Counted from the stretch's first letter, positions 24,001 to 47,150 are shown. The stretch: DNA of 64,000 bases from Paramoeba atlantica (GCA_977017575.1 CDRNVI010000046.1:124001-188000); one strand, 5' to 3'. Notes: generated from the sequence alone by a model not told the origin. Program-made: numbers and translations.

Positions 24001-24201
24001 ACAAAAAACGCGTAAAGGAAAAGGATTCTACAAGTAAGTAATCAGTAAATATGTAAATTTTCAGAATACATATTGTAGCTTTTATACATGATTCAATTAC
24101 AACCCCCTTTCGGGGAAAAGAACAATGAAAATTATAACCCCCTTCCGGGGCATTTGACCCGATATTAGCCCCTCGGTTAAATTTCCATGCGTAGACTTCT
24201 A

Positions 24202-28037: not shown

Positions 28038-28301
28038 TTTTTTTTTTTTTTTTTTTAACCGCGGATGATGGCACGGAAGATAGCCACCACATGGACTGGG
28101 GTAATAAACAGTGGATTTTAAGAAATGTGATATAAGCCCCTCGGCTAAATTTCCATGCGTAGACTTCTAGATTTTAACCCATCTAACCTAAATTTATTCA
28201 TTACTAACAAAGGAAAAACCACTTAGAAAGCGAGAGCCATCTCACTCTCATCAGAAATAAACTTCTTCAACTGCGAAAAAGTCACAGCTCCGTTGAGTTC
28301 A
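28038..28301 (-). mobile_element. 5'-truncated CRE-A 3' end inserted in the 153-bp satellite
   Basis: Encodes ELNGAVTFSQLKKFISDESEMALAF*; poly(A) 28038-28056; TSD agctgaa at 28031 and 46609; carries a Y6-like terminal piece at about 28125-28171. Confidence 0.8.
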
Positions 28302-28837
28302 ATATAATAATAATAATAATAACAAAAGACTATACACATGCAACTTTCAACGTACACTCTCCTTAGCGCACTGAAACATCTATCCACATCACGAATAGGC
28401 CAAACCGCGGATTATGCGAATGGAGGTAGGAGACCTATCCTCTTTTGCAATTAGGAGAAAACGTGTACAAACGAGCACAAGCAAACCAGAACAATCTTAC
28501 AATTAGCCATTTTCAGCTCAATATTTCACCATCGATATTCAACGCGGTACCAAGGGTTAAGCAGTACGCAAGTTCTTGCCTTCATTGCCGCGTCATATGC
28601 CCGAAGAGCAACTCAGCGCCAACTTGTTCTCTGCTTGCCAAATAAACCACCGTATACTATCAATATTACGTACCCCACTCAGTGTTTTCGATGAGTACGG
28701 ATATTTAGCAATGAAATATACATAAATGCTCCAGAATATTATTAACGCGTTGGTAAATAAATGTACCAAGAGGACATAACACTCCTGAAAATAAGCGTTC
28801 CAGATTAATGCGCAAAGTTATACACAGCAAATTTCGA

Positions 28838-31800
28838 TTACATATAGCGGCTTTTCTTCACAAAAATGGGGGCATTCGTCAGTCTACCCCGTGATGTCTT
28901 GTACTGAGAAAACGTTACTGGATCCCCGGTATTAGCTTCTGGGTTGAGTGAACGAGCAATCCTGACTGTGCTGCCTTCTTCTGTATTTTTCAGTTTCCCT
29001 TTTTTCATATTCACTTTGTGTGGAGATTTTTCTTGGAGATCATGCTCCCTTTTTTGACCGTGATTAGATTTGTTTCCCTCCCTTTGCGTGTGAATGACGC
29101 ATGAAAAACGACGTGCAGCTGTTCTCTGTGCTTTGCGTGCTATTTCATCAGCTTTTTCATTGAAGGAATTCCCGCAGTGTGCCCGCACTTTAATAACGTA
29201 GAGACTACTATCTGTACAACGCTCTTTAATTGCTCCTTGTATCTGCGTGAGTAGGTCAGCATTTGGCATGCCACCGTATCCAATGATTGAAAAACGAACC
29301 CTAACATTATGATACCAGTCCCATACATAATGAGAATCAGTATGTATAACTGTGTTCCTCGTAGAAGACGAAGCTGCCTGAATGCCTAAAAGAAAGGAGC
29401 GAAGTTCAGCCCGATCCGGTGAAGTGCATTCCGGTGGTAAAACGTGTTGTCTGGTTCTTACACCATTTGAATTAACAATAACTATCCCCGAACCCGCGGC
29501 TGGTTTTCCTGCTTCTGAACTGACAGCCCCATCTACGTATATGTGTTCGGAATCAGCTGAGAGAGGAGAATGGTCCGTGCCTTCTTCAATTCCTTCGAGT
29601 ACTTTGTAGGTGGTAGTATCTAAGTCCTGGCATACCTTCTTCCAGGATCTAGAGCCGAAAACCATGTAGGATTTGTGAGATTCAAGATATTCACGCAAAA
29701 ATTTAACTCTCGACGCCCACCAATCCCGATCTCCCGCTAGGACATTGAGATCTTCGACATCTAGTTCCATGTCTTCAGCACATGCCTCTGATAGAGTGGG
29801 ACGATATTTCTTTCCTGTTGCTTTGCGCCATAGCATTACCGATTTGAAGGGATTATTGCCGCGGATCAGGTGTCCTAGCATTTGAACTCGGAGGACTCGA
29901 CATGCGTTAGAAAGTCGCATTCTGTTCCCATATAGTGCATCACATGGTGTACCTCTTGTACCATCCCAAGTACGAACCCCGAGCGCTAGTCTTCTCATTC
30001 GGTTCACTTCACAGTCAATTAAATCAGCGTCTTTTTTTATTAGGGAAAAGTTTCCACAGCCATACAGCAATAAAGGTGAAACCAGAGATTCGAATAAGTG
30101 AAATTTTGTGACAAGCGTGAGGCCTGATTTCCATAATGACTGTAGGCGATGTGTTGCAGCCCACGCTAAGTTAATTCGGTCTTCAAAGTTTACAATGACA
30201 CCCTTATTAGTAATTTTCAACCCCAAGTATCGATATTCGGTGATTCGAGGCACCAACCCCCCATTCGTTAGAATCAAGTCTCCTTGTGCGTCATTCACTT
30301 GACCTACTGTCATCCACGCAGTTTTATTTACACCAATGTTGAGACGTAAGTTGACTTTCGCAGCTGTTTGTTCCAGTCTTTCCATAACGCGATTCAAATT
30401 AGTAAGAGAGGGACATATGAGCACTAAATCATCCGCGTATGCTAAATAATTTAGACATTGCGCAGGCTTTCCTTGTCTTTTTGTGCCCGCCCTTCGCAAG
30501 ATAAGTCCGAACTCATTTTCCTTATACACTTCAGCCATGACTCGATCCAGAACCATGAGGAATAGGACAGGGGCCAAAACATCACCTTGAAGTGTGCCAC
30601 ACTGGATCGGAAACGTATCAGTAACTCCGCTTTTGCATCGTACAACTGCTTCTGTTTTTTCATACATAGACATTATCATGCTGCTGAGATGCTGCGGGAT
30701 GTGAAAGGCTTCCAGTGCAGCACGAATGGAGAAAAAGCTGACTGAAGGAAATGCCTGACGGAAATCCACGAAGCCTAGCGCAACACCAGGATTCTCACGA
30801 GACGCTTTCTGGCACAACTCAATGAGGGTTGCTTGTGCTCCCGTTGTTGCTCTATTGGGTCGGAATCCGTATTGACAATCACTTAATTGAGCATCCACTG
30901 TAGGAAGAATTCGATTTAGTATCATACGGTTCATGAGTTTTGCAGCGTGCACTATTAGACATATTGGTCTCCAATTGTTCATGTTGCCTAAGTCGCCTTT
31001 TTTCGGAACTGGGACTTGGATAACTCGTTTCCATGTCTGTGGCGCTCTTCCGCTCTCACGAACCATATTAATTAAATGTAGAAGAATAGATTGTATGAAC
31101 GGATCGCTGTTCAGTACTCGTAAGGCTTCAATTGGAATCGAGTCAATGCCTGGTGCTTTACCAGTTGCCATATCTTTAAGAGCAGTCGTCAATTCATTGA
31201 GATCAAACGGTCCATCAGATATAGGGATAAACGACTTTGGCGCTTCCGCAAATTTGATCTTGTTGTCTACCTCCTTTAGTTGCACAGTATTCTGAAAGTG
31301 TAATCGCACATTACATAATTGTTCGCTTTTTGTTTTTCCTGGCGGTCTGAGGCGTGATGAAGTGTGCCCAGTCATCATTTTAACATGTCTCCAAGAAGAA
31401 CGTTTGTATCTTTGAAAGTTTTGTTGTAGAGACAGGCATTCTTGAGTGATATTTTCATTCACGGTGATGCTATGTTCTTTTACTAGAGAATCGAACCTCT
31501 GCGGACTTTGAGACGTACGGAAAATGTCACGGATTCGCAACTGTGTAGTAGTTTCATCGTTTGAAGCAAACATGTTTATGTTTTTCTCCTTCGTTGGTAT
31601 AGATTCAGCAGCCATGATAATTGCTTTTTCCAATTTATCCCACAAAATATCACTTGGAAATATCACAGGCATTTCGGTTGACATTTTCTGGTTTGGCTCA
31701 TTTCGTCTTCTTTTCATCCCAACTATCTCCGCATGTTCGGTGTAGTTCTCTTTCACACGGCGTATGAAGTCCATACATATTTGTGGATCCTTTAACTGAT

Positions 31801-33043
31801 ACCACGGTAATCGCAAGCTACCGTCATTTACTGAAGCTTTCCAACGAAACTTAGTTTTTACTGTTACTATTTGATGTCGAGTCGGCACCGGGGGTTGGAG
31901 AACTCTGTGGCCATGTAAGGTAGTGACGAAACGTTTGTTGACAAGAATATGGTCTAGTTGTTTTACAGTTCCATTTTGAAAAGTATAAGTCCACTTCTTT
32001 CTGCTTGGGCAGGATGTATGTGCCGCGCGAGCCCCAAGCTCAGACAGTAAATTGGTAAGCCGATGTTGTGCCTTATTTTTACGCATTATTCGCTGACACT
32101 TATCTGTCAGTGGCGCATTAAGATCCCCCAGAACAAGTTTTATTTTCGCATTACTAAGATTCCATGCATCACGTAGATCATTGCAAAATTTCTCCTTTAC
32201 GTCATCTTTTGCCACCGCCGTGGGGGCATAAACATTGAATAGCACACCGTGGAATTTTGGTAAGTCTAGAGTAACCTGTTGGATCCGATCACTGATTCGC
32301 GACACAAGAGCAGGCTCAAATAGGCTTAGAATCATGAGTCCACCGTAACCTTTGATAGCGCCTTGAATATAAACATGAAATACGAACTTTCCATGACGAA
32401 TTGTCTGATGTGCAATGTTTTGAATGATATCGGTTTGTACACGAGTTTCCTGAAGGCAACAGAGGGCAAGGCCTCGCTCGACCATGTACGACATAATTTC
32501 CCGTAGTCGTGTCGATTTGCGAAGGGAGAAATAATCAGTTCCCTTTAGTTTCAGGGTAGTGACGTTTAGAGTTGCAAGATGTAGCGTCTTGTTCGTGGCA
32601 ATGGGGTTAGATTCCTCGACCGCCGGGGAGCCATTCCGACGGGGAAGTCGGGCAGAACGGTGCTTCCTACATTTCTTCTTACGGGGGGGTGCCACGCGGC
32701 CCGCACAGATCGCTACTCGTGGGTCTATAGGGGGAAAAGGAAACGATACTCCAGGACAACAGTCATAGCGAATACGCCATAGACCATTTTTGGCCCGAAA
32801 TTTCGCAGTCCCTTGCCACATCTTTAGCCTTTGAGCAAACGACCAGCGCCAGACCACAGCGACACGAGACCCCGCACGAATCGTGTTGGACATACTGGTT
32901 ACCGCACGATCACGGAGTTTTGCTACGCCAACCTTTGACTTTGATGGCCAAAAATTGACGCCCCGACCTAACCTGGACCGACCAATAAGAGCAACCGGGT
33001 CAGAACACCGCTTTCTCTCATTGACCGTGCCGGAGGTATCCAT
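28838..33043 (-). CDS. Intact 1401-aa APE endonuclease - RT - RNase H polyprotein (ingi/L1Tc-like domain order)
   Basis: APE: TLNV, LQETR, NVYAPT, GDLNA, LDHI. RT: APGIDS, WRPICL, QYGFRP, DFRQAF, QGD, YADD, YLG. RNase H: YVDG, RAEL, HTDS, KVRAH, NEKAD. Confidence 0.95.
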   Translation of the reverse strand: MDTSGTVNERKRCSDPVALIGRSRLGRGVNFWPSKSKVGVAKLRDRAVTSMSNTIRAGSRVAVVWRWSFAQRLKMWQGTAKFRAKNGLWRIRYDCCPGVSFPFPPIDPRVAICAGRVAPPRKKKCRKHRSARLPRRNGSPAVEESNPIATNKTLHLATLNVTTLKLKGTDYFSLRKSTRLREIMSYMVERGLALCCLQETRVQTDIIQNIAHQTIRHGKFVFHVYIQGAIKGYGGLMILSLFEPALVSRISDRIQQVTLDLPKFHGVLFNVYAPTAVAKDDVKEKFCNDLRDAWNLSNAKIKLVLGDLNAPLTDKCQRIMRKNKAQHRLTNLLSELGARAAHTSCPSRKKWTYTFQNGTVKQLDHILVNKRFVTTLHGHRVLQPPVPTRHQIVTVKTKFRWKASVNDGSLRLPWYQLKDPQICMDFIRRVKENYTEHAEIVGMKRRRNEPNQKMSTEMPVIFPSDILWDKLEKAIIMAAESIPTKEKNINMFASNDETTTQLRIRDIFRTSQSPQRFDSLVKEHSITVNENITQECLSLQQNFQRYKRSSWRHVKMMTGHTSSRLRPPGKTKSEQLCNVRLHFQNTVQLKEVDNKIKFAEAPKSFIPISDGPFDLNELTTALKDMATGKAPGIDSIPIEALRVLNSDPFIQSILLHLINMVRESGRAPQTWKRVIQVPVPKKGDLGNMNNWRPICLIVHAAKLMNRMILNRILPTVDAQLSDCQYGFRPNRATTGAQATLIELCQKASRENPGVALGFVDFRQAFPSVSFFSIRAALEAFHIPQHLSSMIMSMYEKTEAVVRCKSGVTDTFPIQCGTLQGDVLAPVLFLMVLDRVMAEVYKENEFGLILRRAGTKRQGKPAQCLNYLAYADDLVLICPSLTNLNRVMERLEQTAAKVNLRLNIGVNKTAWMTVGQVNDAQGDLILTNGGLVPRITEYRYLGLKITNKGVIVNFEDRINLAWAATHRLQSLWKSGLTLVTKFHLFESLVSPLLLYGCGNFSLIKKDADLIDCEVNRMRRLALGVRTWDGTRGTPCDALYGNRMRLSNACRVLRVQMLGHLIRGNNPFKSVMLWRKATGKKYRPTLSEACAEDMELDVEDLNVLAGDRDWWASRVKFLREYLESHKSYMVFGSRSWKKVCQDLDTTTYKVLEGIEEGTDHSPLSADSEHIYVDGAVSSEAGKPAAGSGIVIVNSNGVRTRQHVLPPECTSPDRAELRSFLLGIQAASSSTRNTVIHTDSHYVWDWYHNVRVRFSIIGYGGMPNADLLTQIQGAIKERCTDSSLYVIKVRAHCGNSFNEKADEIARKAQRTAARRFSCVIHTQREGNKSNHGQKREHDLQEKSPHKVNMKKGKLKNTEEGSTVRIARSLNPEANTGDPVTFSQYKTSRGRLTNAPIFVKKSRYM

Positions 33044-33059
33044 GGCCTTATTATAACGA

Positions 33060-36000
33060 TTACAATAAGGAAAGGTCTTACAATAAGGAAAGGTCTTACA
33101 ATAAGGAAAGGTCTTACAATAAGGAAAGGTCTTACAATAAGGAAAGGTCTTACAATAAGGAAAGGTCTTACAATAAGGAAAGGTCTTACAATAAGGAAAG
33201 GTCTTACAATAAGGAAAGGTCTTACAATAAGGAAAGGTCTTACAATAAGGAAAGGTCTTACAATAAGGAAAGGTCTTACAATAAGGAAAGGTCTTACAAT
33301 AAGGAAAGGTCTTACAATAAGGAAAGGTCTTACAATAAGGAAAGGTCTTACAATAAGGAAAGGTCTTACAATAAGGAAAGGTCTTACAATAAGGAAAGGT
33401 CTTACAATAAGGAAAGGTCTTACAATAAGGAAAGGTCTTACAATAAGGAAAGGTCTTACAATAAGGAAAGGTCTTACAATAAGGAAAGGTCTTACAATAA
33501 GGAAAGGTCTTACAATAAGGAAAGGTCTTACAATAAGGAAAGGTCTTACAATAAGGAAAGGTCTTACAATAAGGAAAGGTCTTACAATAAGGAAAGGTCT
33601 TACAATAAGGAAAGGTCTTACAATAAGGAAAGGTCTTACAATAAGGAAAGGTCTTACAATAAGGAAAGGTCTTACAATAAGGAAAGGTCTTACAATAAGG
33701 AAAGGTCTTACAATAAGGAAAGGTCTTACAATAAGGAAAGGTCTTACAATAAGGAAAGGTCTTACAATAAGGAAAGGTCTTACAATAAGGAAAGGTCTTA
33801 CAATAAGGAAAGGTCTTACAATAAGGAAAGGTCTTACAATAAGGAAAGGTCTTACAATAAGGAAAGGTCTTACAATAAGGAAAGGTCTTACAATAAGGAA
33901 AGGTCTTACAATAAGGAAAGGTCTTACAATAAGGAAAGGTCTTACAATAAGGAAAGGTCTTACAATAAGGAAAGGTCTTACAATAAGGAAAGGTCTTACA
34001 ATAAGGAAAGGTCTTACAATAAGGAAAGGTCTTACAATAAGGAAAGGTCTTACAATAAGGAAAGGTCTTACAATAAGGAAAGGTCTTACAATAAGGAAAG
34101 GTCTTACAATAAGGAAAGGTCTTACAATAAGGAAAGGTCTTACAATAAGGAAAGGTCTTACAATAAGGAAAGGTCTTACAATAAGGAAAGGTCTTACAAT
34201 AAGGAAAGGTCTTACAATAAGGAAAGGTCTTACAATAAGGAAAGGTCTTACAATAAGGAAAGGTCTTACAATAAGGAAAGGTCTTACAATAAGGAAAGGT
34301 CTTACAATAAGGAAAGGTCTTACAATAAGGAAAGGTCTTACAATAAGGAAAGGTCTTACAATAAGGAAAGGTCTTACAATAAGGAAAGGTCTTACAATAA
34401 GGAAAGGTCTTACAATAAGGAAAGGTCTTACAATAAGGAAAGGTCTTACAATAAGGAAAGGTCTTACAATAAGGAAAGGTCTTACAATAAGGAAAGGTCT
34501 TACAATAAGGAAAGGTCTTACAATAAGGAAAGGTCTTACAATAAGGAAAGGTCTTACAATAAGGAAAGGTCTTACAATAAGGAAAGGTCTTACAATAAGG
34601 AAAGGTCTTACAATAAGGAAAGGTCTTACAATAAGGAAAGGTCTTACAATAAGGAAAGGTCTTACAATAAGGAAAGGTCTTACAATAAGGAAAGGTCTTA
34701 CAATAAGGAAAGGTCTTACAATAAGGAAAGGTCTTACAATAAGGAAAGGTCTTACAATAAGGAAAGGTCTTACAATAAGGAAAGGTCTTACAATAAGGAA
34801 AGGTCTTACAATAAGGAAAGGTCTTACAATAAGGAAAGGTCTTACAATAAGGAAAGGTCTTACAATAAGGAAAGGTCTTACAATAAGGAAAGGTCTTACA
34901 ATAAGGAAAGGTCTTACAATAAGGAAAGGTCTTACAATAAGGAAAGGTCTTACAATAAGGAAAGGTCTTACAATAAGGAAAGGTCTTACAATAAGGAAAG
35001 GTCTTACAATAAGGAAAGGTCTTACAATAAGGAAAGGTCTTACAATAAGGAAAGGTCTTACAATAAGGAAAGGTCTTACAATAAGGAAAGGTCTTACAAT
35101 AAGGAAAGGTCTTACAATAAGGAAAGGTCTTACAATAAGGAAAGGTCTTACAATAAGGAAAGGTCTTACAATAAGGAAAGGTCTTACAATAAGGAAAGGT
35201 CTTACAATAAGGAAAGGTCTTACAATAAGGAAAGGTCTTACAATAAGGAAAGGTCTTACAATAAGGAAAGGTCTTACAATAAGGAAAGGTCTTACAATAA
35301 GGAAAGGTCTTACAATAAGGAAAGGTCTTACAATAAGGAAAGGTCTTACAATAAGGAAAGGTCTTACAATAAGGAAAGGTCTTACAATAAGGAAAGGTCT
35401 TACAATAAGGAAAGGTCTTACAATAAGGAAAGGTCTTACAATAAGGAAAGGTCTTACAATAAGGAAAGGTCTTACAATAAGGAAAGGTCTTACAATAAGG
35501 AAAGGTCTTACAATAAGGAAAGGTCTTACAATAAGGAAAGGTCTTACAATAAGGAAAGGTCTTACAATAAGGAAAGGTCTTACAATAAGGAAAGGTCTTA
35601 CAATAAGGAAAGGTCTTACAATAAGGAAAGGTCTTACAATAAGGAAAGGTCTTACAATAAGGAAAGGTCTTACAATAAGGAAAGGTCTTACAATAAGGAA
35701 AGGTCTTACAATAAGGAAAGGTCTTACAATAAGGAAAGGTCTTACAATAAGGAAAGGTCTTACAATAAGGAAAGGTCTTACAATAAGGAAAGGTCTTACA
35801 ATAAGGAAAGGTCTTACAATAAGGAAAGGTCTTACAATAAGGAAAGGTCTTACAATAAGGAAAGGTCTTACAATAAGGAAAGGTCTTACAATAAGGAAAG
35901 GTCTTACAATAAGGAAAGGTCTTACAATAAGGAAAGGTCTTACAATAAGGAAAGGTCTTACAATAAGGAAAGGTCTTACAATAAGGAAAGGTCTTACAAT

Positions 36001-37368: not shown

Positions 37369-38223
37369 GAATTGCTCATCAGAATATAATTTTAATAAAC
37401 AAATAATTAATTTGTAATCACTAAATATAATTTATCAAATACGAGGCACCCAAATACCTGTGTTTTGAACGTTACTATAAATAAAATTATTTGATGAATA
37501 TAGTACTAAAGGACGTCCTTATCAAAACAATCTTCACCTCTCTCTCTCTTGCGAATGGGTAGTTCCCCGGCGGGGAGTGGTTCGGGGGATGGCGGGTGGG
37601 GCAACTTTCCTTTTGCGAAAATAGAGAAAAGCTACTAGTGTAATAATAAAGTATAGTACTGTATAATTGATAATCTACAAATATACATGGTTCCCCCCAG
37701 AGGGGGCAATGTCACACTGAAATCAGATCATAATATTAAATATCATGTGCCCCGTAGGGCCACGGTCAGATCTCATACAGAATCAAAAGTATCTTCTTTG
37801 ATCAATTCTTTCCGTAAACTATAAGAATTGCTCATCAGAATATAATTTTAATAAACAAATAATTAATTTGTAATCACTAAATATAATTTATCAAATACGA
37901 GGCACCCAAATACCTGTGTTTTGAACGTTACTATAAATAAAATTATTTGATGAATATAGTACTAAAGGACGTCCTTATCAAAACAATCTTCACCTCTCTC
38001 TCTCTTGCGAATGGGTAGTTCCCCGGCGGGGACCACCCACTCGCCAGTTCTCACAATCACCCACACGCTAGTAATGTGGCGAAACCCCCAGGTCGCCTAC
38101 TACCTGAGAGCCCCCCTCATCACCTCGTACTCTCACTCACACATTGCCCAATCCTCACATCAACATACATCCCATACATATCAAAATCGCTCGAATATCC
38201 GTTCTTCCTGGTTATTGATTGTA

Positions 38224-41046
38224 TCAATGCTTTTTCTCTTCACACATTCTGCTATATGGATCTGCAGGATTTTCTTTTGATGCAATATATTCTGCCTGTA
38301 CTGCAATTCCTTGACGATTCAAATATTTCAACAAACCATACAACTCCGAAGTAATGCCATCAGATCCTGACACTTTCCTATTGATCGCTGCTAAACAGGA
38401 TGTATTGTCAACAAATAAATCTACGCATGTATCTCGCTGAAAGTGATGCCCGTACTTCTCAAACGCCAAACGTACTGCCCGAGCTTCGGCTCGATTCACT
38501 TCGTACTTGAAACCCTCCGGCCAGGAGGCTCCGGTACATAAAACTTTCCCATAGTCGAGGTAAAGCACCGCCCCCCACCCGGTGGACGACGCATCGGTAA
38601 ATAGAACGTGCTGATGTGGTACTGTATCAGGGTGTCGGACCGGGTCCACTGGAGAACAATAGATCAAGGAATCGCGCCACTCGGTCAACTTCACTCGCAC
38701 TCGTAATGGTAAAGGTACGACAGTATCCAATAGGCAAGGATCGCGATTTAAATGATTGATTCGTCGTCGGACAATTTTCAAGAATAGATGATATTGGGGA
38801 ATCGGTATGCCCATGATTGCCGAAGCAAAAATGAGCCTCCCAACACCGGCCTCCAGCCCAGAGTATGTGGTATGCATGTAGTTATCATTCTGAAGTCTTC
38901 GCGTTATCTTGGGTCCCAATGCAACTTTCCCTGATCGGTGGTGATAATTGACTCCATTGAATGTGTAGTTCTGCAAAGGTGGCACCCCAAGCTCCTTAAA
39001 ACGGGCGTTAACTTGCTGCGCCCGTCGATCTATAAACGCGGCATATTCCTGTGTATTTTTGTCACTAGAAGCGTAACGAATGCCGTCGATATACACATCC
39101 AGACCATTGTGGGCAAACGCCGATTTCTTATTACAGTAAGCTGGATCTCCCGCTATTGTCGCGGTTAACGAGTGCATCAACTCAGGGGCACACCGGTGTC
39201 CCATCGGCATCACATTCATTTCATATACTTGCCCACTGCGGTCCAAAAATCTGAACTTCGCCCTACTTTCGGATGGAATCGCGACCTGAAAAAAACCGCA
39301 TGCCAGATCACGCTTTACCGCCGAGTCCTGTCGGGCTCGATGGAGATAATAGGCTGCATGTTTTACCGGTACTTGTGGCTCATAAACCTCCTTAATCCGC
39401 GCGTTGTCATCCCGGGTCCATGCTATAAACCGCCGGCGTTCTGTCTCGTCGTCAGCAGGCTCGACAACCGTGAATGGTATCACCCATTCCATCGTTGGGC
39501 GACGCTGTGCTTCCTCTGTGTTGACGTGTGACACAAATCCTGCGTCCACCAGCTGGGTTATATCCTTGTCGTGCAATAATGATTTACACGCCGGTGTTTT
39601 ACTCGGAGTGTTTGGTAACCGAGTTAAAATTTTCCATGTCTCCTGGAAGCGCTCACGTGCTTTTTGGTTCATTAACAGTTTAAGTCGCTCGACCTCCATC
39701 TGTGGAATATTTAGCTTCACATGCAAGGGCAACTTCCAATCCCCCTCCTGTGCCACCTTAGAGGTCCTCCTCGATCTCGTTATTGTGTGCTTTACCTTCT
39801 CGTGTGGTATATCTTCCAAAAACTTGCTAAAAATAACCTCGGGGCTCACAGTATCTGTAGTTTTGACGTGGCCTTCTGGGTACCAAGCGCCAAGGCGGTA
39901 GTGACTGGGTCCGCATTGTACCGCAGGAGGGACTCCAGGGATTGGTGCTTTGCGAGATGTTGCACCTCGTCGAGTCGGATTGTCCCGTTGGCTACCTCTG
40001 TGAAAAGGTGTGTGATTGCGCCCCTCTTCGCCGAATGCGTGCCGTACCCCGCCCCTAACCGCTCTCGAATGCGGGCGTCGACCTCCGTCACCGTTGATCT
40101 GGACATTGGCTGGTGCTGTCCCAACTGACTGATGTACGCGTGAAGGGTAGCGGTTCCGGGGCCCTCGATCACCGTGTACATGGAGGGTCGGTATGGGTTG
40201 AACCTGGAAGTCTTTGTTTTTCGCCCCCACCAAATCACTATTCTTAACGGCGTTAATTCGCGAAATTGTTCCTTCGTCAAACTTGCAGTCTCTGTCCACC
40301 GGCTGGCTGCTTTCCAACAAAGCATCAAGGTATGTCTTTCGCTGCATGGGAGATGGTGCCATAACTGGTTCAGTAACGTGGGTGTCAAAGGAGCCATCTG
40401 GCGTACTGGCTCCGTGGCCCCTTCTGCCATCAGTGATTTTACATAAAATTTTAGAGGATTCGTTTCCAGGCCTGCGAGGCTTAATATAGAAGCGAGGCTG
40501 CGTGCGTACGTGAGCTTGCCCTGTACTCTGATGTTCATCGTCGCCACAAAAGTTACTGCATGTATCGCGGTAATTTCGATTGCCTTCCAATTGCAAAAGG
40601 CGGTTAGTCTTTCCCACAACCTCGCCCTGCTTTTCCAGGTTGCGTTGCTCCACATCTCGGACATCCCATCTAGTGCTACACGGACCTCTTCCGTCACGTG
40701 AGTAATTCCCATTAATAACTTCATCAACTTCATCCTTACTGGCGTAGTATCCACACTTAACATTCCTCCGTACAAACTCCCAGATCTTATCAATCTCCCT
40801 TTCAAGTCGCCTGCACTTGGTACATTCACCGTCTGCTTTTCCGTTTGTAACCTTCTCTCCCTCCTCCTTTTCTTTGCAACTTGCATATTCGACACACTTT
40901 TCCCCTTGAATATAATAACACTGGCCGTTAGGGTGGGGCTTTTTCATAAGCTCTTGCTGCTCCCGGCAGGGCCAGCCACCCGCGAACGAAAATCCCGCTT
41001 TGGACAGTTTTTCCATACATGATCGGGTGAACGGCACCCAAAACAC
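38224..41046 (-). CDS. ORF3 RT/RNase H of Y3; overlaps the gag end and all of YR in the -1 frame
   Basis: KRDLACGFFQV, MPMGHRCAPE, DVYIDG, LFTDASSTGWG, EVNRAEA, FVDN, NPADPYSR. Confidence 0.93.
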   Translation of the reverse strand: MFWVPFTRSCMEKLSKAGFSFAGGWPCREQQELMKKPHPNGQCYYIQGEKCVEYASCKEKEEGEKVTNGKADGECTKCRRLEREIDKIWEFVRRNVKCGYYASKDEVDEVINGNYSRDGRGPCSTRWDVRDVEQRNLEKQGEVVGKTNRLLQLEGNRNYRDTCSNFCGDDEHQSTGQAHVRTQPRFYIKPRRPGNESSKILCKITDGRRGHGASTPDGSFDTHVTEPVMAPSPMQRKTYLDALLESSQPVDRDCKFDEGTISRINAVKNSDLVGAKNKDFQVQPIPTLHVHGDRGPRNRYPSRVHQSVGTAPANVQINGDGGRRPHSRAVRGGVRHAFGEEGRNHTPFHRGSQRDNPTRRGATSRKAPIPGVPPAVQCGPSHYRLGAWYPEGHVKTTDTVSPEVIFSKFLEDIPHEKVKHTITRSRRTSKVAQEGDWKLPLHVKLNIPQMEVERLKLLMNQKARERFQETWKILTRLPNTPSKTPACKSLLHDKDITQLVDAGFVSHVNTEEAQRRPTMEWVIPFTVVEPADDETERRRFIAWTRDDNARIKEVYEPQVPVKHAAYYLHRARQDSAVKRDLACGFFQVAIPSESRAKFRFLDRSGQVYEMNVMPMGHRCAPELMHSLTATIAGDPAYCNKKSAFAHNGLDVYIDGIRYASSDKNTQEYAAFIDRRAQQVNARFKELGVPPLQNYTFNGVNYHHRSGKVALGPKITRRLQNDNYMHTTYSGLEAGVGRLIFASAIMGIPIPQYHLFLKIVRRRINHLNRDPCLLDTVVPLPLRVRVKLTEWRDSLIYCSPVDPVRHPDTVPHQHVLFTDASSTGWGAVLYLDYGKVLCTGASWPEGFKYEVNRAEARAVRLAFEKYGHHFQRDTCVDLFVDNTSCLAAINRKVSGSDGITSELYGLLKYLNRQGIAVQAEYIASKENPADPYSRMCEEKKH
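39846..40895 (-). CDS. Tyrosine recombinase of Y3
   Basis: SRWTE (R), KTK (K), HSAKRGA, AKH, LLRY (Y). Confidence 0.93.
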   Translation of the reverse strand: MSNMQVAKKRRRERRLQTEKQTVNVPSAGDLKGRLIRSGSLYGGMLSVDTTPVRMKLMKLLMGITHVTEEVRVALDGMSEMWSNATWKSRARLWERLTAFCNWKAIEITAIHAVTFVATMNIRVQGKLTYARSLASILSLAGLETNPLKFYVKSLMAEGATEPVRQMAPLTPTLLNQLWHHLPCSERHTLMLCWKAASRWTETASLTKEQFRELTPLRIVIWWGRKTKTSRFNPYRPSMYTVIEGPGTATLHAYISQLGQHQPMSRSTVTEVDARIRERLGAGYGTHSAKRGAITHLFTEVANGTIRLDEVQHLAKHQSLESLLRYNADPVTTALALGTQKATSKLQIL

Positions 41047-42137
41047 AGCATTCCCGGTCTTCGGTATGGCGCAGGCGCGCGAGCTGGTGTGACGTGCGGA
41101 GTAAAATAACGCTGCGATCCTTGAGGTACATACGTGGCGTATGCTCGAGATAAACGTTTTTCTCTTTCGGCCAGCTGATCACTCACGTGGTGGTAAAATT
41201 TATCGTTGGGACGCACGTCTTTTTGCATTTTCTCATGTACTAGCTCCACGTCCACGCGACGCGCACGCCAGTACGCGTCACGTAGCGATTGGATAATTGC
41301 TCGGCCCATCTCAAGAAAAGTACTCTGGTTCCACCCGGGCGTTTGTCGAGCCAGAATAATCCACTTGCAGAAAATTCCATTAAAATTACGCTCTTGCTGT
41401 TTTACGAAAGTACGATCTTGGAAGTACTGGTTAACTCGTAATCCAAACTCAGGTGCATCACGCAGTTCACGTATTAAATCCCTCGTTCGAAACCCACCCT
41501 CATCGAGAGACATAATCCACGGCTCAAATGTAATGGGCTCATAGGGATCCAGGGCGTTCGGGTCGAGAACCAACGGGGATGCATCTGTCGAAAATATCAC
41601 TTCCGCAGGTTCCTCATTAACACGAGTTTCATCGAGCGCGTTCATTTGCCGTACAGGTCGGCGCCCTTGTGTCGGTAACATCGCAGAGGGTACAGTTGGT
41701 TGAGTTCCTGGCGTGGTCGAAGGTTGTGTCGGATCTCCTGCTGTCTGTGGCCCCCCCTGGGCTGTCCCTCCCCTCGTCTCGGTCTGTGGAACCTCCCCTG
41801 GAAAATGGTGGATTTTTACCTGATAATAATTCAGTTCCGCATGAGGAAAAGGATACTCTTTCGTGGGTTCATCTTCCCACACGGCCCATAACTCCAAACC
41901 TTCCTGACGAACTTTTCCGTACACTGCTTTTATTGATTCATTGGGCTCGTCCTTGCGGCGAAAAAAAGCTTGCACTGACACCGCCGGCTTGTCGGCCGGT
42001 GCCAAAAGAAGTCTCTCCCGGATCACTGCACATACATTGGTCAGATCGTGCGTCGTAAGCGGCTCGGTAGGCGCGAGCGGCTCCGTCACAGGAGAGGAAC
42101 GTCGGGAGCTCCGTAAGCTCCGCGTCGAAGGATTCAT
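40944..42137 (-). CDS. gag: Gag-like protein of Y3
   Basis: First ATG at 42137 just inside A1; CFGCRSPDHVWKNC knuckle. Confidence 0.88.
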   Translation of the reverse strand: MNPSTRSLRSSRRSSPVTEPLAPTEPLTTHDLTNVCAVIRERLLLAPADKPAVSVQAFFRRKDEPNESIKAVYGKVRQEGLELWAVWEDEPTKEYPFPHAELNYYQVKIHHFPGEVPQTETRGGTAQGGPQTAGDPTQPSTTPGTQPTVPSAMLPTQGRRPVRQMNALDETRVNEEPAEVIFSTDASPLVLDPNALDPYEPITFEPWIMSLDEGGFRTRDLIRELRDAPEFGLRVNQYFQDRTFVKQQERNFNGIFCKWIILARQTPGWNQSTFLEMGRAIIQSLRDAYWRARRVDVELVHEKMQKDVRPNDKFYHHVSDQLAEREKRLSRAYATYVPQGSQRYFTPHVTPARAPAPYRRPGMLCFGCRSPDHVWKNCPKRDFRSRVAGPAGSSKSL

Positions 42138-42376
42138 AGTTGCGAGTTCTGATCGCAACTTTCCTTTTGCGAAAATAGAGAAAAGCTACTAGTGTAATAA
42201 TAAAGTATAGTACTGTATAATTGATAATCTACAAATATACATGGTTCCCCCCAGAGGGGGCAATGTCACACTGAAATCAGATCATAATATTAAATATCAT
42301 GTGCCCCGTAGGGCCACGGTCAGATCTCATACAGAATCAAAAGTATCTTCTTTGATCAATTCTTTCCGTAAACTAT

Positions 42377-45300
42377 AATAAGGAAAGGTCTTACAATAAG
42401 GAAAGGTCTTACAATAAGGAAAGGTCTTACAATAAGGAAAGGTCTTACAATAAGGAAAGGTCTTACAATAAGGAAAGGTCTTACAATAAGGAAAGGTCTT
42501 ACAATAAGGAAAGGTCTTACAATAAGGAAAGGTCTTACAATAAGGAAAGGTCTTACAATAAGGAAAGGTCTTACAATAAGGAAAGGTCTTACAATAAGGA
42601 AAGGTCTTACAATAAGGAAAGGTCTTACAATAAGGAAAGGTCTTACAATAAGGAAAGGTCTTACAATAAGGAAAGGTCTTACAATAAGGAAAGGTCTTAC
42701 AATAAGGAAAGGTCTTACAATAAGGAAAGGTCTTACAATAAGGAAAGGTCTTACAATAAGGAAAGGTCTTACAATAAGGAAAGGTCTTACAATAAGGAAA
42801 GGTCTTACAATAAGGAAAGGTCTTACAATAAGGAAAGGTCTTACAATAAGGAAAGGTCTTACAATAAGGAAAGGTCTTACAATAAGGAAAGGTCTTACAA
42901 TAAGGAAAGGTCTTACAATAAGGAAAGGTCTTACAATAAGGAAAGGTCTTACAATAAGGAAAGGTCTTACAATAAGGAAAGGTCTTACAATAAGGAAAGG
43001 TCTTACAATAAGGAAAGGTCTTACAATAAGGAAAGGTCTTACAATAAGGAAAGGTCTTACAATAAGGAAAGGTCTTACAATAAGGAAAGGTCTTACAATA
43101 AGGAAAGGTCTTACAATAAGGAAAGGTCTTACAATAAGGAAAGGTCTTACAATAAGGAAAGGTCTTACAATAAGGAAAGGTCTTACAATAAGGAAAGGTC
43201 TTACAATAAGGAAAGGTCTTACAATAAGGAAAGGTCTTACAATAAGGAAAGGTCTTACAATAAGGAAAGGTCTTACAATAAGGAAAGGTCTTACAATAAG
43301 GAAAGGTCTTACAATAAGGAAAGGTCTTACAATAAGGAAAGGTCTTACAATAAGGAAAGGTCTTACAATAAGGAAAGGTCTTACAATAAGGAAAGGTCTT
43401 ACAATAAGGAAAGGTCTTACAATAAGGAAAGGTCTTACAATAAGGAAAGGTCTTACAATAAGGAAAGGTCTTACAATAAGGAAAGGTCTTACAATAAGGA
43501 AAGGTCTTACAATAAGGAAAGGTCTTACAATAAGGAAAGGTCTTACAATAAGGAAAGGTCTTACAATAAGGAAAGGTCTTACAATAAGGAAAGGTCTTAC
43601 AATAAGGAAAGGTCTTACAATAAGGAAAGGTCTTACAATAAGGAAAGGTCTTACAATAAGGAAAGGTCTTACAATAAGGAAAGGTCTTACAATAAGGAAA
43701 GGTCTTACAATAAGGAAAGGTCTTACAATAAGGAAAGGTCTTACAATAAGGAAAGGTCTTACAATAAGGAAAGGTCTTACAATAAGGAAAGGTCTTACAA
43801 TAAGGAAAGGTCTTACAATAAGGAAAGGTCTTACAATAAGGAAAGGTCTTACAATAAGGAAAGGTCTTACAATAAGGAAAGGTCTTACAATAAGGAAAGG
43901 TCTTACAATAAGGAAAGGTCTTACAATAAGGAAAGGTCTTACAATAAGGAAAGGTCTTACAATAAGGAAAGGTCTTACAATAAGGAAAGGTCTTACAATA
44001 AGGAAAGGTCTTACAATAAGGAAAGGTCTTTACAATAAGGAAAGGTCTTACAATAAGGAAAGGTCTTACAATAAGGAAAGGTCTTACAATAAGGAAAGGT
44101 CTTACAATAAGGAAAGGTCTTACAATAAGGAAAGGTCTTACAATAAGGAAAGGTCTTACAATAAGGAAAGGTCTTACAATAAGGAAAGGTCTTACAATAA
44201 GGAAAGGTCTTACAATAAGGAAAGGTCTTACAATAAGGAAAGGTCTTACAATAAGGAAAGGTCTTACAATAAGGAAAGGTCTTACAATAAGGAAAGGTCT
44301 TACAATAAGGAAAGGTCTTACAATAAGGAAAGGTCTTACAATAAGGAAAGGTCTTACAATAAGGAAAGGTCTTACAATAAGGAAAGGTCTTACAATAAGG
44401 AAAGGTCTTACAATAAGGAAAGGTCTTACAATAAGGAAAGGTCTTACAATAAGGAAAGGTCTTACAATAAGGAAAGGTCTTACAATAAGGAAAGGTCTTA
44501 CAATAAGGAAAGGTCTTACAATAAGGAAAGGTCTTACAATAAGGAAAGGTCTTACAATAAGGAAAGGTCTTACAATAAGGAAAGGTCTTACAATAAGGAA
44601 AGGTCTTACAATAAGGAAAGGTCTTACAATAAGGAAAGGTCTTACAATAAGGAAAGGTCTTACAATAAGGAAAGGTCTTACAATAAGGAAAGGTCTTACA
44701 ATAAGGAAAGGTCTTACAATAAGGAAAGGTCTTACAATAAGGAAAGGTCTTACAATAAGGAAAGGTCTTACAATAAGGAAAGGTCTTACAATAAGGAAAG
44801 GTCTTACAATAAGGAAAGGTCTTACAATAAGGAAAGGTCTTACAATAAGGAAAGGTTTACAATAAGGAAAGGTCTTACAATAAGGAAAGGTCTTACAATA
44901 AGGAAAGGTCTTACAATAAGGAAAGGTCTTACAATAAGGAAAGGTCTTACAATAAGGAAAGGTCTTACAATAAGGAAAGGTCTTACAATAAGGAAAGGTC
45001 TTACAATAAGGAAAGGTCTTACAATAAGGAAAGGTCTTACAATAAGGAAAGGTCTTACAATAAGGAAAGGTCTTACAATAAGGAAAGGTCTTACAATAAG
45101 GAAAGGTCTTACAATAAGGAAAGGTCTTACAATAAGGAAAGGTCTTACAATAAGGAAAGGTCTTACAATAAGGAAAGGTCTTACAATAAGGAAAGGTCTT
45201 ACAATAAGGAAAGGTCTTACAATAAGGAAAGGTCTTACAATAAGGAAAGGTCTTACAATAAGGAAAGGTCTTACAATAAGGAAAGGTCTTACAATAAGGA

Positions 45301-46598
45301 AAGGTCTTACAATAAGGAAAGGTCTTACAATAAGGAAAGGTCTTACAATAAGGAAAGGTCTTACAATAAGGAAAGGTCTTACAATAAGGAAAGGTCTTAC
45401 AATAAGGAAAGGTCTTACAATAAGGAAAGGTCTTACAATAAGGAAAGGTCTTACAATAAGGAAAGGTCTTACAATAAGGAAAGGTCTTACAATAAGGAAA
45501 GGTCTTACAATAAGGAAAGGTCTTACAATAAGGAAAGGTCTTACAATAAGGAAAGGTCTTACAATAAGGAAAGGTCTTACAATAAGGAAAGGTCTTACAA
45601 TAAGGAAAGGTCTTACAATAAGGAAAGGTCTTACAATAAGGAAAGGTCTTACAATAAGGAAAGGTCTTACAATAAGGAAAGGTCTTACAATAAGGAAAGG
45701 TCTTACAATAAGGAAAGGTCTTACAATAAGGAAAGGTCTTACAATAAGGAAAGGTCTTACAATAAGGAAAGGTCTTACAATAAGGAAAGGTCTTACAATA
45801 AGGAAAGGTCTTACAATAAGGAAAGGTCTTACAATAAGGAAAGGTCTTACAATAAGGAAAGGTCTTACAATAAGGAAAGGTCTTACAATAAGGAAAGGTC
45901 TTACAATAAGGAAAGGTCTTACAATAAGGAAAGGTCTTACAATAAGGAAAGGTCTTACAATAAGGAAAGGTCTTACAATAAGGAAAGGTCTTACAATAAG
46001 GAAAGGTCTTACAATAAGGAAAGGTCTTACAATAAGGAAAGGTCTTACAATAAGGAAAGGTCTTACAATAAGGAAAGGTCTTACAATAAGGAAAGGTCTT
46101 ACAATAAGGAAAGGTCTTACAATAAGGAAAGGTCTTACAATAAGGAAAGGTCTTACAATAAGGAAAGGTCTTACAATAAGGAAAGGTCTTACAATAAGGA
46201 AAGGTCTTACAATAAGGAAAGGTCTTACAATAAGGAAAGGTCTTACAATAAGGAAAGGTCTTACAATAAGGAAAGGTCTTACAATAAGGAAAGGTCTTAC
46301 AATAAGGAAAGGTCTTACAATAAGGAAAGGTCTTACAATAAGGAAAGGTCTTACAATAAGGAAAGGTCTTACAATAAGGAAAGGTCTTACAATAAGGAAA
46401 GGTCTTACAATAAGGAAAGGTCTTACAATAAGGAAAGGTCTTACAATAAGGAAAGGTCTTACAATAAGGAAAGGTCTTACAATAAGGAAAGGTCTTACAA
46501 TAAGGAAAGGTCTTACAATAAGGAAAGGTCTTACAATAAGGAAAGGTCTTACAATAAGGAAAGGTCTTACAATAAGGAAAGGTCTTACAATAAGGAAA
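42377..46598. repeat. 18-bp tandem array continued, about 234 copies
   Basis: Same unit and orientation; 1-nt indels at about 44031 and 44857. Confidence 0.98.
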
Positions 46599-46608
46599 GT
46601 TGAGTTCA

Positions 46609-47150
46609 AGCTGAAAGGAGGTTTGGGCGCTCGAGGCCAGAAATCACAACCTGCGGATAAGAAACCAACACGCTTCGCGCAGACAAGTCCTCATGGCACG
46701 TTTCCCGTAGCTTTCCGTGAGCGCGAAGATTACTCATCCGGAAGTTGACGAAACCCAGCCGAGCTGAAAGGAGGTTTGGGCGCTCGAGGCCAGAAATCAC
46801 AACCTGCGGATAAGACACCAACACGCTTCGCGCAGACAAGTCCTCATGGCACGTTTCCCGTAGCTTTCCGTGAGCGCGAAGATTACTCATCCGGAAGTTG
46901 ACGAAACCCAGCCGAGCTGAAAGGAGGTTTGGGCGCTCGAGGCCAGAAATCACAACCTGCGGATAAGAAACCAACACGCTTCGCGCAGACAAGTCCTCAT
47001 GGCACGTTTCCCGTAGCTTTCCGTGAGCGCGAAGATTACTCATCCGGAAGTTGACGAAACCAAGCCGAGCTGAAAGGAGGTTTGGGCGCTCGAGGCCAGA
47101 AATCACAACCTGCGGATAAGACACCAACACGCTTCGCGCAGACAAGTCCT
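46609..47150. repeat. 153-bp satellite continued, about 3.5 copies
   Basis: Resumes in the register where it broke at 28037. Confidence 0.95.

What the first reader, a model, noticed from the sequence alone, without database searches (positions are those of the whole stretch)
28292..46609. About 8.5 kb of 18-bp repeat lies inside a LINE's target-site duplication, at its 5' end
Seen: gttgagttcaa (11 bp) abuts the (TTA)n tail at 28302 and recurs at 46599, exactly where the array ends. The array runs to within 16 nt of the ATG at 33043. An outer 7-bp TSD (agctgaa) independently restores the 153-bp satellite register. The ~474 monomers are therefore part of the inserted unit or expanded within it. 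Established: mouse L1 has tandem 5' promoter monomers, but they are few and ~200 bp long. Inference: a LINE that carries or generates a satellite, i.e. satellite birth from a 5' UTR.
Basis: partly seen in the sequence, partly recalled or inferred. Interest (0 to 1): 0.8.

Follow-up and report, generated by a model that had tools for sequence, protein, structure and literature searches.

The report
LINE family with 18-bp 5' arrays
A jumping gene (LINE) of a trans-splicing protist carries, as its own front end, a tandem array of an 18-base unit that here has reached 474 copies (8.5 kb), and distant relatives carry different 18-base units in the same place, so a satellite-sized repeat is being made and spread by a retrotransposon.

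Summary
An intact APE-RT-RNase H LINE on the minus strand, plus about 474 near-perfect 18-bp units, lies between two copies of GTTGAGTTCAA. An outer 7-bp duplication restores the register of the 153-bp repeat.

- **Array continuity:** it is one array, later split by a 5-kb tyrosine-recombinase (VIPER/TATE-like) element.
- **Other copies:** three at least 99% identical copies at other loci carry the same unit directly 5' of the same start codon, with 7, 70 and 80 units. One of them (L014) sits inside its own 12-bp duplication.
- **Distant relatives:** four lineages at 33-38% protein identity carry different units of exactly 18 bp running into their ATG. A fifth relative has a spliced-leader relic there instead.
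- **Host:** a euglenozoan with a kinetoplastid-like spliced leader.

The array is therefore a heritable, co-mobilised 5' module of this LINE clade, not a neighbouring satellite or a misassembly.

Function and growth mechanism are inferred. The likeliest function is a T-rich/AAG leader, meaning a stack of trans-splice acceptors. Length is probably set largely at retrotransposition, and an RNase-H-ruler reiteration model remains open.

First-stage notes of this scan had already flagged such arrays at other loci of this genome. I found no description in the searchable literature.

The parts
25824..28030 (.). 153-bp tandem repeat, left part (host target of the composite insertion)
   Evidence: TRF finds 14.5 copies at 98% identity. 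The register continues across the excised insertion.
28031..28037 (.). Outer 7-bp target-site duplication AGCTGAA, copy 1
28038..28291 (-). Poly(A)-tailed retrocopy 'X' (T20 at 28038-28057 on the + strand). Its first 11 nt are the inner duplication.
   Evidence: Sequence. It contains a 41-44-nt high-copy module at 28129-28172. No other full copy was found in the window or in the fetched loci.
28292..28302 (.). Inner target-site duplication GTTGAGTTCAA, copy at the LINE 3' side
   Evidence: It occurs only twice in the window.
28303..28325 (-). LINE 3' tail, (TTA)n on the sense strand
   Evidence: Copies L001 and L014 have the same tail.
28326..28837 (-). LINE 3' UTR
   Evidence: 98.9% identical to L001.
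28838..33043 (-). LINE ORF, 1401 aa. Domains: Tudor-like barrel (aa ~55-118, nt 32690-32881), APE (aa 176-377, nt 31913-32518), RT (aa 679-944, nt 30212-31009), RNase H (aa 1166-1305, nt 29129-29548).
   Evidence: ORF. Pfam domains. N-terminal fold. Only 3 private differences in 4.6 kb against six other copies.
33044..33059 (-). 16-nt spacer TCGTTATAATAAGGCC (sense), a degenerate proximal unit ending AAG|GCC before the ATG
   Evidence: 12 of 16 positions match the TCCTTATTGTAAGACC part of the unit, by direct comparison. The spacer is identical in L001, L014 and L015.
33060..37368 (-). 18-bp array, ATG-proximal half (239 units; sense unit GACCTTTCCTTATTGTAA)
37369..42378 (-). Later insertion of a tyrosine-recombinase-type retroelement. 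Split direct repeats on the minus strand run A1 (42376-42155), internal part, B1 (38032-37828), A2 (37827-37601), B2 (37576-37369). An AA crossover dinucleotide marks the joints.
   Evidence: Repeats are 100% identical. Junctions. Weak RT and RNase H hits. The repeat pattern is as described for VIPER/TATE in PMC6681497.
42379..46598 (-). 18-bp array, distal half (about 235 units), in phase with the proximal half
46599..46609 (.). Inner target-site duplication GTTGAGTTCAA, copy at the 5' end of the array
46609..46615 (.). Outer 7-bp duplication AGCTGAA, copy 2 (shares one A with the inner duplication)
46616..47150 (.). 153-bp tandem repeat resumes

Best explanation
**What it is.** The 18-bp array is the LINE's own 5' leader. 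It is a tandem stack of one 18-nt unit (a T-rich tract followed by AAG) that runs up to the start codon of a single APE-RT-RNase H ORF.

**How it moves (shown).**
- The array lies inside the target-site duplication (TSD) in both testable copies.
- Its outer end falls at a different phase of the unit in each copy.
- Copy number differs widely between near-identical copies: 0, 7, 70, 80 and 474 units.

**History of this locus.**
1. A very young, intact copy landed at the 5' edge of an older poly(A) retrocopy inside a 153-bp repeat.
2. A YR retroelement later integrated into the middle of its array.

**Inferred steps.**
- The array travels with the element through the RNA/cDNA intermediate.
- Array length is set mainly at or near retrotransposition. 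Contributors would be copying of a long leader, microhomology joining anywhere in the array, and possibly reiterative copying by the RT. Replication slippage adds only minor later change.
- In this host, which uses spliced-leader (SL) trans-splicing, each unit serves as a polypyrimidine/AG acceptor-leader. Read-through transcripts could then be turned into capped, translatable LINE mRNA.
- The exact 18-nt period, kept while the sequence drifted, points to a molecular ruler in the element's own machinery.
For: **Anatomy and both TSDs.**

**Independent copies.** The same unit, spacer and ATG are found in L001 (70 units), L014 (80 units, 12-bp TSD TGTGTTTCCTTT with about 5 nt of microhomology to the unit) and L015 (7 units). 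L013 is truncated 30 nt into the element and has none.

**Where the unit occurs.** In 203 kb of this organism's DNA the exact unit occurs nowhere else.

**Depth.** Word depth of the array is about 90 times that of the LINE body in runs X1 and X2, which fits tens to hundreds of units per copy.

**Clade-wide pattern.** Other 18-bp units abut the ATG in four relatives:
- L002: CCGTTTATCTTTTTTAAG
- L004: GATAAGGGTGTTCATTTT
- L004/L005: TAAAGGTCATGCTTTTAT
- L006: AAAAGATTGTTTTAAAGG

Shorter APE-RT LINEs without RNase H (L007, L008) have no such array.

**Trans-splicing host.** SL-exon relics head at least 8 other retroelement copies. Relative L003 has an SL-like relic in place of an array, directly upstream of its ORF.

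**Array age tracks copy age.** Variants per kb in the array against private differences per kb in the body are 0.35/0.66 (window), 1.4/2.6 (L014) and about 2.4-3.2/5.3 (L001).

**Assembly.** Each array half is anchored by unique sequence on both sides: the LINE body and the YR element, then the YR element and the TSD.
Against: - **No RNA data.** No RNA run holds the element, so neither the RNA 5' end nor SL addition within the array is shown.
- **No SL relic on array copies.** None of the four array-bearing copies has an SL relic at its 5' end, although other element families in the same genome do. Retrotransposition of RNA trans-spliced inside the array is therefore not what produced these copies.
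- **Weak sequence signal.** T-rich + AG is weak as a statistical signal. About 69% of random 18-mers contain AG. The units are only marginally more alike than shuffles (mean best circular identity 9.5 against 9.0 of 18, p about 0.03).
- **L001 has no recognisable TSD**.
- **Unexplained coincidence.** The inner TSD coincides exactly with the 5' end of retrocopy X.
- **Small counts.** The age/purity comparison rests on very few events (3, 2 and 3-4). Arrays are about twofold purer than the bodies, so some in-place turnover or assembly smoothing is possible.
- **Period exception.** L019 shows only about 1.6 units, with an apparent 19-nt spacing.
Confidence: 0.6

Rival explanations
1. **RNase-H-ruler reiteration.** The array is synthesised afresh at each integration.
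1. When the RT reaches the RNA 5' end, the trailing RNase H leaves a terminal RNA oligo of about 18 nt on the cDNA.
2. This oligo re-anneals out of register and is copied again and again, as in telomerase.
3. The result is a pure array whose period equals the spacing between the polymerase and RNase H active sites.
For: - The period is exactly 18 bp in at least 7 unrelated unit sequences: five LINE lineages plus arrays in L016 and L017.
- Arrays were seen only in the RNase-H-bearing clade.
- Arrays are pure at birth, with private variants only.
- The 5' phase is arbitrary, with microhomology at the junction.
- Array copies lack an SL relic.
- These RTs already reiterate at the 3' end, giving (TTA)n, (TGG)n, (GAT)n, (GTA)n, (TAGG)n and (TTAG)n tails.
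- From my own knowledge: in retroviral RTs the two active sites are about 17-18 bp apart.
Against: - There is no biochemical evidence for any LINE.
- The spacing in this protein is unknown; the RT and RNase H domains are about 220 aa apart in sequence.
- Two adjacent units in L001 share one variant. That looks like duplication of DNA units rather than independent copying from one RNA oligo.
- A conserved period could instead reflect a binding protein.
- L019 may have a 19-nt spacing.
Confidence: 0.25
2. **In-place minisatellite expansion.** The element arrived with a few units. The 8.5 kb arose afterwards at this locus by replication slippage or unequal sister exchange, without the LINE machinery.
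For: - Minisatellites with 10-60-bp units are known to expand in this way (my own knowledge).
- Arrays are about twofold purer than the private divergence of their LINE bodies predicts: 8-9 events against about 16 expected.
- An adjacent duplicated variant is present in L001.
- This locus is an outlier, with 474 units against 7-80 elsewhere.
Against: - The longest array belongs to the youngest copy (0.66 private differences per kb), and variant density rises with copy age in all three arrays. This is not expected if arrays keep turning over.
- The YR insertion sits in an array that is in phase and equally pure on both sides.
- It does not explain the conserved 18-bp period, or why every lineage keeps an array at the ATG.
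Confidence: 0.25
3. **Composite or transduced unit.** The 11-bp repeat is not the TSD of a separate LINE insertion here. LINE + array + GTTGAGTTCAA + 254 nt + poly(A) was one read-through RNA from another locus, inserted once with the 7-bp duplication.
For: - The inner repeat lies exactly at the 5' end of the poly(A) unit and shares a base with the outer duplication.
- The whole block is bounded by a clean 7-bp TSD with a poly(A) tail.
Against: - It needs the cDNA to stop exactly at the upstream TSD copy of the donor, a coincidence as large as the one it removes.
- It needs a poly(A)-primed RT acting in trans on a 13-18-kb RNA.
- L014 shows this family makes 12-bp TSDs of its own, directly flanking array and tail.
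- Under either reading the array is inside the mobilised unit.
Confidence: 0.12
4. **Assembly artefact.** The array length, or its linkage to the LINE, is an error of the assembler in a repeat-rich region.
For: - Perfect short-period arrays are hard to assemble.
- Only Logan contigs, not spanning long reads, could be laid.
- Arrays are slightly purer than expected.
Against: - Two nested duplications restore both the retrocopy and the 153-bp register.
- Each half of the array is anchored by unique sequence on both sides.
- The spacer/array junction is reproduced in three other loci of another assembly and in contigs of four runs.
- Short-read contigs of relatives end in such arrays.
Confidence: 0.05

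Closest known systems
Mouse/rat L1 5' monomers (A, Tf, Gf types)
   Same: Tandem units form the extreme 5' end of an autonomous LINE, inside the TSD. The number varies between copies, and the outermost unit is truncated at an arbitrary point.
   Different: The L1 units are about 200 bp, number a few to a few tens, and are proven Pol II promoters. Here the units are 18 bp, number up to 474, abut the ATG, and sit in a host that processes mRNAs by trans-splicing. Promoter activity is untested.
ingi / L1Tc LINEs of trypanosomatids
   Same: Euglenozoan host, a single long ORF with APE, RT and RNase H, and TSDs of about 12 bp (PMC12278014).
   Different: ingi/L1Tc start with the 77-nt Pr77 promoter/HDV-like ribozyme and end in poly(A). 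This element has no Rfam ribozyme match, has an 18-bp array instead, and has a (TTA)n tail. No named ingi/L1Tc protein appeared among its homologues.
SVA / LAVA composite retrotransposons
   Same: A short-unit tandem array ((CCCTCT)n) sits at the very 5' end inside the TSD, along with a variable VNTR. Length changes from copy to copy.
   Different: These are non-autonomous primate elements mobilised by L1, with a hexamer unit and no coding capacity. Their arrays are tens of units, not hundreds.
SIRE/VIPER and other TE-borne trans-splice acceptors in Trypanosoma cruzi
   Same: A mobile element supplies a polypyrimidine/AG signal used for SL addition in a trans-splicing host (my own knowledge; SIRE/VIPER structure in PMC6681497).
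   Different: There it is a single site exapted by neighbouring host genes. Here it would be a tandem stack serving the element's own ORF, and its use is not yet shown.
Telomerase and Drosophila telomeric LINEs (TART/HeT-A 5'-end replenishment)
   Same: An RT-based way of renewing a terminal sequence that would otherwise erode. In telomerase this is reiterative copying of a short template.
   Different: No chromosome end is involved. The unit is 18 nt, and reiteration is only a hypothesis here.
Satellites born from tandem repeats inside transposable elements
   Same: A TE-internal short tandem repeat grows to satellite size (8.5 kb).
   Different: The array remains attached to an intact, apparently active element. 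It is a conserved, period-locked feature of the whole clade rather than a by-product at one locus.

Membership tests
APE-type LINE (non-LTR retrotransposon) | ORF with AP-endonuclease and reverse transcriptase domains | tested here: met
   Pfam hits: Exo_endo_phos at 4.5e-6, RVT_1 at 2.6e-30, and also RNase_H at 1.8e-15.
APE-type LINE (non-LTR retrotransposon) | Target-site duplication, simple-repeat 3' tail and 5'-truncated copies | tested here: met
   TSDs of 11 bp (window) and 12 bp (L014). (TTA)n tails are present. Truncated copies are L013, L016 and L017.
ingi/L1Tc clade | Single ORF with APE-RT-RNase H in a euglenozoan host | tested here: met
   Domains. SL-exon relics in the same genome.
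ingi/L1Tc clade | Pr77 hallmark / HDV-like ribozyme at the 5' end | tested here: not met
   No Rfam match at gathering score in the window, nor at E<=1 in 32700-33200. The 5' end is the 18-bp array. The Pr77 sequence itself was not available for a direct comparison.
ingi/L1Tc clade | Poly(A) tail | tested here: not met
   The tail is (TTA)n in all copies. Relatives have other 3-4-nt repeats.
ingi/L1Tc clade | RT phylogeny groups it with ingi/L1Tc | not tested
   No reference sequences were available offline. No named ingi/L1Tc protein appeared among 69 + 103 homologues.
LINEs with tandem 5' monomers (mouse L1 type) | Tandem units at the extreme 5' end inside the TSD, with number variable between copies | tested here: met
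   474, 80, 70 and 7 units in copies at least 99% identical.
LINEs with tandem 5' monomers (mouse L1 type) | Units of about 200 bp with promoter activity | tested here: not met
   The unit is 18 bp. Promoter activity cannot be tested with these tools.
Trans-splice acceptor region | Polypyrimidine tract followed by AG shortly upstream of the ORF | tested here: inconclusive
   All five LINE units can be rotated to a T-rich run followed by (T/A)AAG, with the last AG 3-17 nt before the ATG. The composition signal is weak (p about 0.03).
Trans-splice acceptor region | SL actually joined there in RNA | not testable with these tools
   No RNA run holds the element. The only indirect evidence is that relative L003 carries an SL-like relic just upstream of its ORF.
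Free-standing satellite DNA | Long arrays independent of a mobile element | tested here: not met
   All four arrays of this unit in 203 kb are attached to the LINE start. A genome-wide census was not possible. A few contig ends show the array next to other sequence.

The most novel reading that the evidence does not exclude
This LINE clade regenerates its own 5' end by telomerase-like reiteration.

- The RNase H domain, trailing the polymerase by about 18 nt, leaves a terminal 18-nt RNA that is re-used as template.
- Each insertion is therefore born with a fresh, pure array.
- The array's period is a read-out of the enzyme's geometry.
- The array's units double as trans-splice acceptors.
Probability: 0.25. 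Interest if true: 0.85.

Novelty: new variant of a known kind. Interest (0 to 1): 0.72.

Why it matters
**5' erosion.** LINEs lose their 5' ends at every jump. How they keep a working front end is known for only a few families: mouse L1 monomers, Pr77 in trypanosomes and TART in flies. Here a whole clade in trans-splicing protists uses a short, period-locked tandem unit that reaches the start codon and can grow to satellite size.

**Three testable openings.**
- How a promoterless element in a polycistronic, trans-splicing genome obtains capped mRNA.
- Whether a LINE RT/RNase H can reiterate a terminal template.
- How kilobase satellites can be born and dispersed by an active retrotransposon.

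**Annotation.** Such arrays mark intact LINE 5' ends and would break short-read assemblies at exactly that point.

Tried and rejected
1. **Snap-back hairpin at the array/ORF joint.** The window has an 11-bp hairpin, but it is no better than shuffles (z -0.9) and is not conserved in L002, L005 or L006. The apparent inverted copy is better read as a degenerate direct unit.
2. **RNA evidence.** No RNA run holds the element. Only Logan contigs were available, so spanning long reads could not be checked.
3. **Known RNA families.** None were found in the window or at the LINE 5' end.
4. **Inherited array variants.** I tested whether arrays lack inherited, lineage-level variants. The three informative copies differ at only 3 non-private body sites, so the test has no power.
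5. **Common descent of the units.** Only a marginal excess similarity was seen.
6. **TSD for L001.** None was found.
7. **Further relatives.**
   - L018 is 5'-truncated inside a 177-bp satellite.
   - L019 shows only about 1.6 units with an apparent 19-nt spacing.
   - L007 and L008 belong to another clade and have no arrays.
8. **Naming the organism or the LINE clade.** Homologues are unnamed metagenome proteins. The SL relic sequence was not found in the paper library.
9. **Literature.** Five searches and four papers gave no description of such arrays.
10. **The array as coding sequence.** One frame of the window unit is open, but it has no start codon. In L002 the frame of the ORF has a stop in every unit (by reading).

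Full report
**1. What is in the window**

Read on the + strand, the layout is as follows.
- A 153-bp tandem repeat (25824-28037, resuming at 46609-47150) is interrupted at AGCTGAA.
- Cutting out 28038-46615 and keeping one AGCTGAA restores 98-100% identity at lag 153 across the joint. Keeping both copies or neither gives 0.16-0.33.
- Inside the interruption comes T20 plus 234 nt, a poly(A)-tailed retrocopy on the minus strand, here called X.
- Then comes GTTGAGTTCAA (28292-28302), followed by a (TAA)n run. That run is the (TTA)n tail of a minus-strand LINE.
- The LINE has one ORF of 1401 aa (28838-33043) with AP-endonuclease, reverse transcriptase and RNase H domains.
- Sixteen nt beyond its ATG the 18-bp array begins. 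It runs to 46598, where GTTGAGTTCAA recurs.
- That 11-mer occurs only at these two places in 64 kb.

The array has 474 units, no substitutions and three 1-nt length variants. The first G of the 11-mer could belong to the array, so the duplication is 10-11 bp.

**2. The array is one array, later split**

- Positions 37369-42378 are a separate element with split direct repeats, each pair 100% identical. On the minus strand they run A1, internal part, B1, A2, B2.
- This is the pattern reported for VIPER/TATE tyrosine-recombinase retroelements of kinetoplastids (PMC6681497).
- The dinucleotide AA is shared by the target, both outer junctions and the internal A|B joint. Removing the element and one AA rejoins the 18-bp units in phase.
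- Each array half is therefore anchored by unique sequence on both sides. This makes a gross assembly error unlikely.

**3. Other copies of the same LINE**

The protein search found a 99% identical protein. Its cluster members led to seven loci in another assembly, ENA ERZ24900291.
- **L001:** 70 units, then the same spacer and ATG.
- **L014:** 80 units and a complete element bounded by a 12-bp duplication, TGTGTTTCCTTT. That duplication lies outside the array and overlaps the unit by about 5 nt of microhomology.
- **L015:** 7 units.
- **L013:** truncated 30 nt into the element and has none.
- **L016 and L017:** deeper truncations.

The outer end of the array falls at a different phase of the unit in each copy. 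In 203 kb of this organism's DNA the exact unit occurs only in these four LINE-attached arrays. These loci were chosen because they contain the LINE, so this is not an unbiased census.

In Logan contigs of four runs, the array words are about 90 times (X1, X2) to over 600 times (X3, X4) as deep as the LINE body. That fits tens to hundreds of units per copy. A few contig ends join the array to other sequence.

**4. Distant relatives**

Proteins at 33-38% identity from other metagenomes lie on contigs that end in, or contain, tandem units of exactly 18 bp running into the start codon.

| Locus | Unit | Position |
|---|---|---|
| L002 | CCGTTTATCTTTTTTAAG | 0 nt from an in-frame ATG |
| L004 | GATAAGGGTGTTCATTTT | upstream of the ORF |
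| L005, and directly behind the tail of L004 | TAAAGGTCATGCTTTTAT | upstream of the ORF |
| L006 | AAAAGATTGTTTTAAAGG | 0 nt from the ATG of a 1562-aa ORF |

- Tails are (TGG)n, (GAT)n, (GTA)n, (TAGG)n and (TTAG)n.
- Further 18-bp arrays with other units occur in L016 and L017. One heads a ~400-bp TSD-bounded element with a (GTT)n tail.
- The units are barely more alike than shuffled sequences (9.5 against 9.0 of 18, p about 0.03), yet the period is the same.
- Shorter APE-RT LINEs without RNase H (L007, L008) have no array.
- L019 shows about 1.6 units with an apparent 19-nt spacing.

**5. The host**

- A 36-37-nt sequence ending ACAGTTTCTGTACCTTGTTG heads at least eight retroelement copies of several families. 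It lies at window 15100-15141 and in L013, L014 and L015.
- From my own knowledge, it resembles the 39-nt spliced leader (SL) of kinetoplastids and diplonemids. The host is therefore a euglenozoan in which elements retrotranspose from trans-spliced mRNA.
- Relative L003 has an SL-like relic, and no array, just upstream of its ORF.
- None of the four array-bearing copies has an SL relic at its outer end.

**6. How it most likely works**

*Shown:* the array is part of the mobilised unit and a property of the clade.

*Inferred, on when the array gets its length:*
- The density of array variants rises with the private divergence of the copy. Per kb, array against body: window 0.35/0.66, L014 1.4/2.6, L001 about 2.4-3.2/5.3.
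- The youngest copy has the longest array.
- Arrays therefore seem to be born long and pure and then decay, rather than growing steadily in place.
- The counts are small and arrays are about twofold purer than the bodies, so some later turnover or assembly smoothing cannot be excluded.

*Inferred, on function:*
- Every unit is a T-rich run followed by (T/A)AAG.
- The last AG lies 3-17 nt before the ATG.
- Other elements in this genome have T/C-rich leaders after their SL relics.

I therefore favour a stack of polypyrimidine/AG acceptors that lets read-through transcripts yield capped LINE mRNA. The absence of SL relics on array copies means those copies did not arise from RNA spliced inside the array.

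*The 18-nt period:* it is kept while the sequence drifted, which calls for a ruler. The most interesting candidate is the polymerase-to-RNase H distance, about 17-18 bp in retroviral RTs (my own knowledge). A terminal 18-nt RNA would then be re-copied. This is untested.

**7. The flank**

- The inner duplication is exactly the first 11 nt of retrocopy X and shares a base with the outer duplication.
- A nested insertion at the edge of X is the simpler reading, because L014 shows the family makes such TSDs itself.
- A single composite or transduced insertion cannot be excluded.
- Under either reading the array is inside the mobilised unit.

**8. Comparison and novelty**

- The element works like the 5' monomers of mouse L1 and, in form, like the 5' hexamer array of SVA.
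- It shares ORF architecture and host group with ingi/L1Tc (PMC12278014). It fails two of that clade's defining features: Pr77/ribozyme and a poly(A) tail.
- I found no description of 18-bp 5' arrays in the searchable literature.
- First-stage notes of this scan had already flagged such arrays at other loci of this genome. Those notes are unchecked, but what I tested agrees with them.

**9. Verdict**

It extends from one locus to a clade-wide, period-locked feature. Function and growth mechanism remain inferences.

Noticed in passing
window 32690-32881 (minus strand; aa ~55-118 of the LINE ORF): The conserved N-terminal domain folds as a five-strand barrel with pLDDT about 90. Its best PDB matches are all Spindlin Tudor-like histone-methyl-lysine readers (E about 0.01, 70 aa, rmsd 3 A). 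It may be a chromatin-targeting module of the LINE..
   Followed up: partly
window 15100-15141; L013 1280, 7541, 19144; L014 5967; L015 411, 5819, 17394: One spliced-leader-like exon relic (...CTTTAACGATAAAGATACAGTTTCTGTACCTTGTTG) heads many retroelement copies of different families. Each is followed by a T/C-rich leader and an ATG. Relics start 2-5 nt into the leader.
   Followed up: partly
window 37369-42378: An intact-looking YR (VIPER/TATE-like) element with 100% identical split repeats. An AA crossover dinucleotide is seen at the target, both junctions and the internal A|B joint. Pfam gives only weak RT/RNase H hits and no recombinase hit.
   Followed up: partly
L017 1647-2050: A ~400-bp TSD-bounded element inserted in a LINE 3' region. 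It has a (GTT)n tail and about 11 units of another 18-bp repeat (AATCCTGGTTGAGCATTT) at its 5' end. It may be a non-autonomous partner of an array-bearing LINE.
   Followed up: no
L017 2772-2908 and L016 5025-5156: Further 18-bp arrays with other units (TTTTTGTTTACTACCCCC and TGTATTAAGATCACTTTT). The second sits in the loop of a 13-bp inverted repeat, CGGCGTGGATTTC/GAAATCCACGCCG.
   Followed up: no
L004 4390-4486: The (GAT)n tail of one LINE is followed directly by the 18-bp array of another family. This is a tail-to-head arrangement of two array-bearing LINEs.
   Followed up: no
window 28129-28172, 21672-21714, 24161-24204: A 41-44-nt module inside retrocopy X recurs in the window at 95% identity. 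It is very deep in the sequencing runs, with several different flanks.
   Followed up: no
window 25823-28006 and 46606-47202 (minus strand): The 153-bp repeat (51 codons) is open on the minus strand over all its copies (ORFs of 727 and 198 aa). It may be a repetitive coding gene rather than a satellite. By chance this is not unlikely.
   Followed up: no
start of the LINE ORFs (window 33028-33043; L002 ~268-285; L003 ~133-150; L004 ~75-92; L005 ~83-100): A nucleotide motif GAYRCCTCCGG (peptide D-A/T-S-G) is kept near the start of ORFs that are only about 35% identical. It may be a cis-acting element, or only a conserved peptide.
   Followed up: no
L018 6500-8309: A 177-bp satellite is present in both orientations around a 5'-truncated relative of the LINE.
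   Followed up: no
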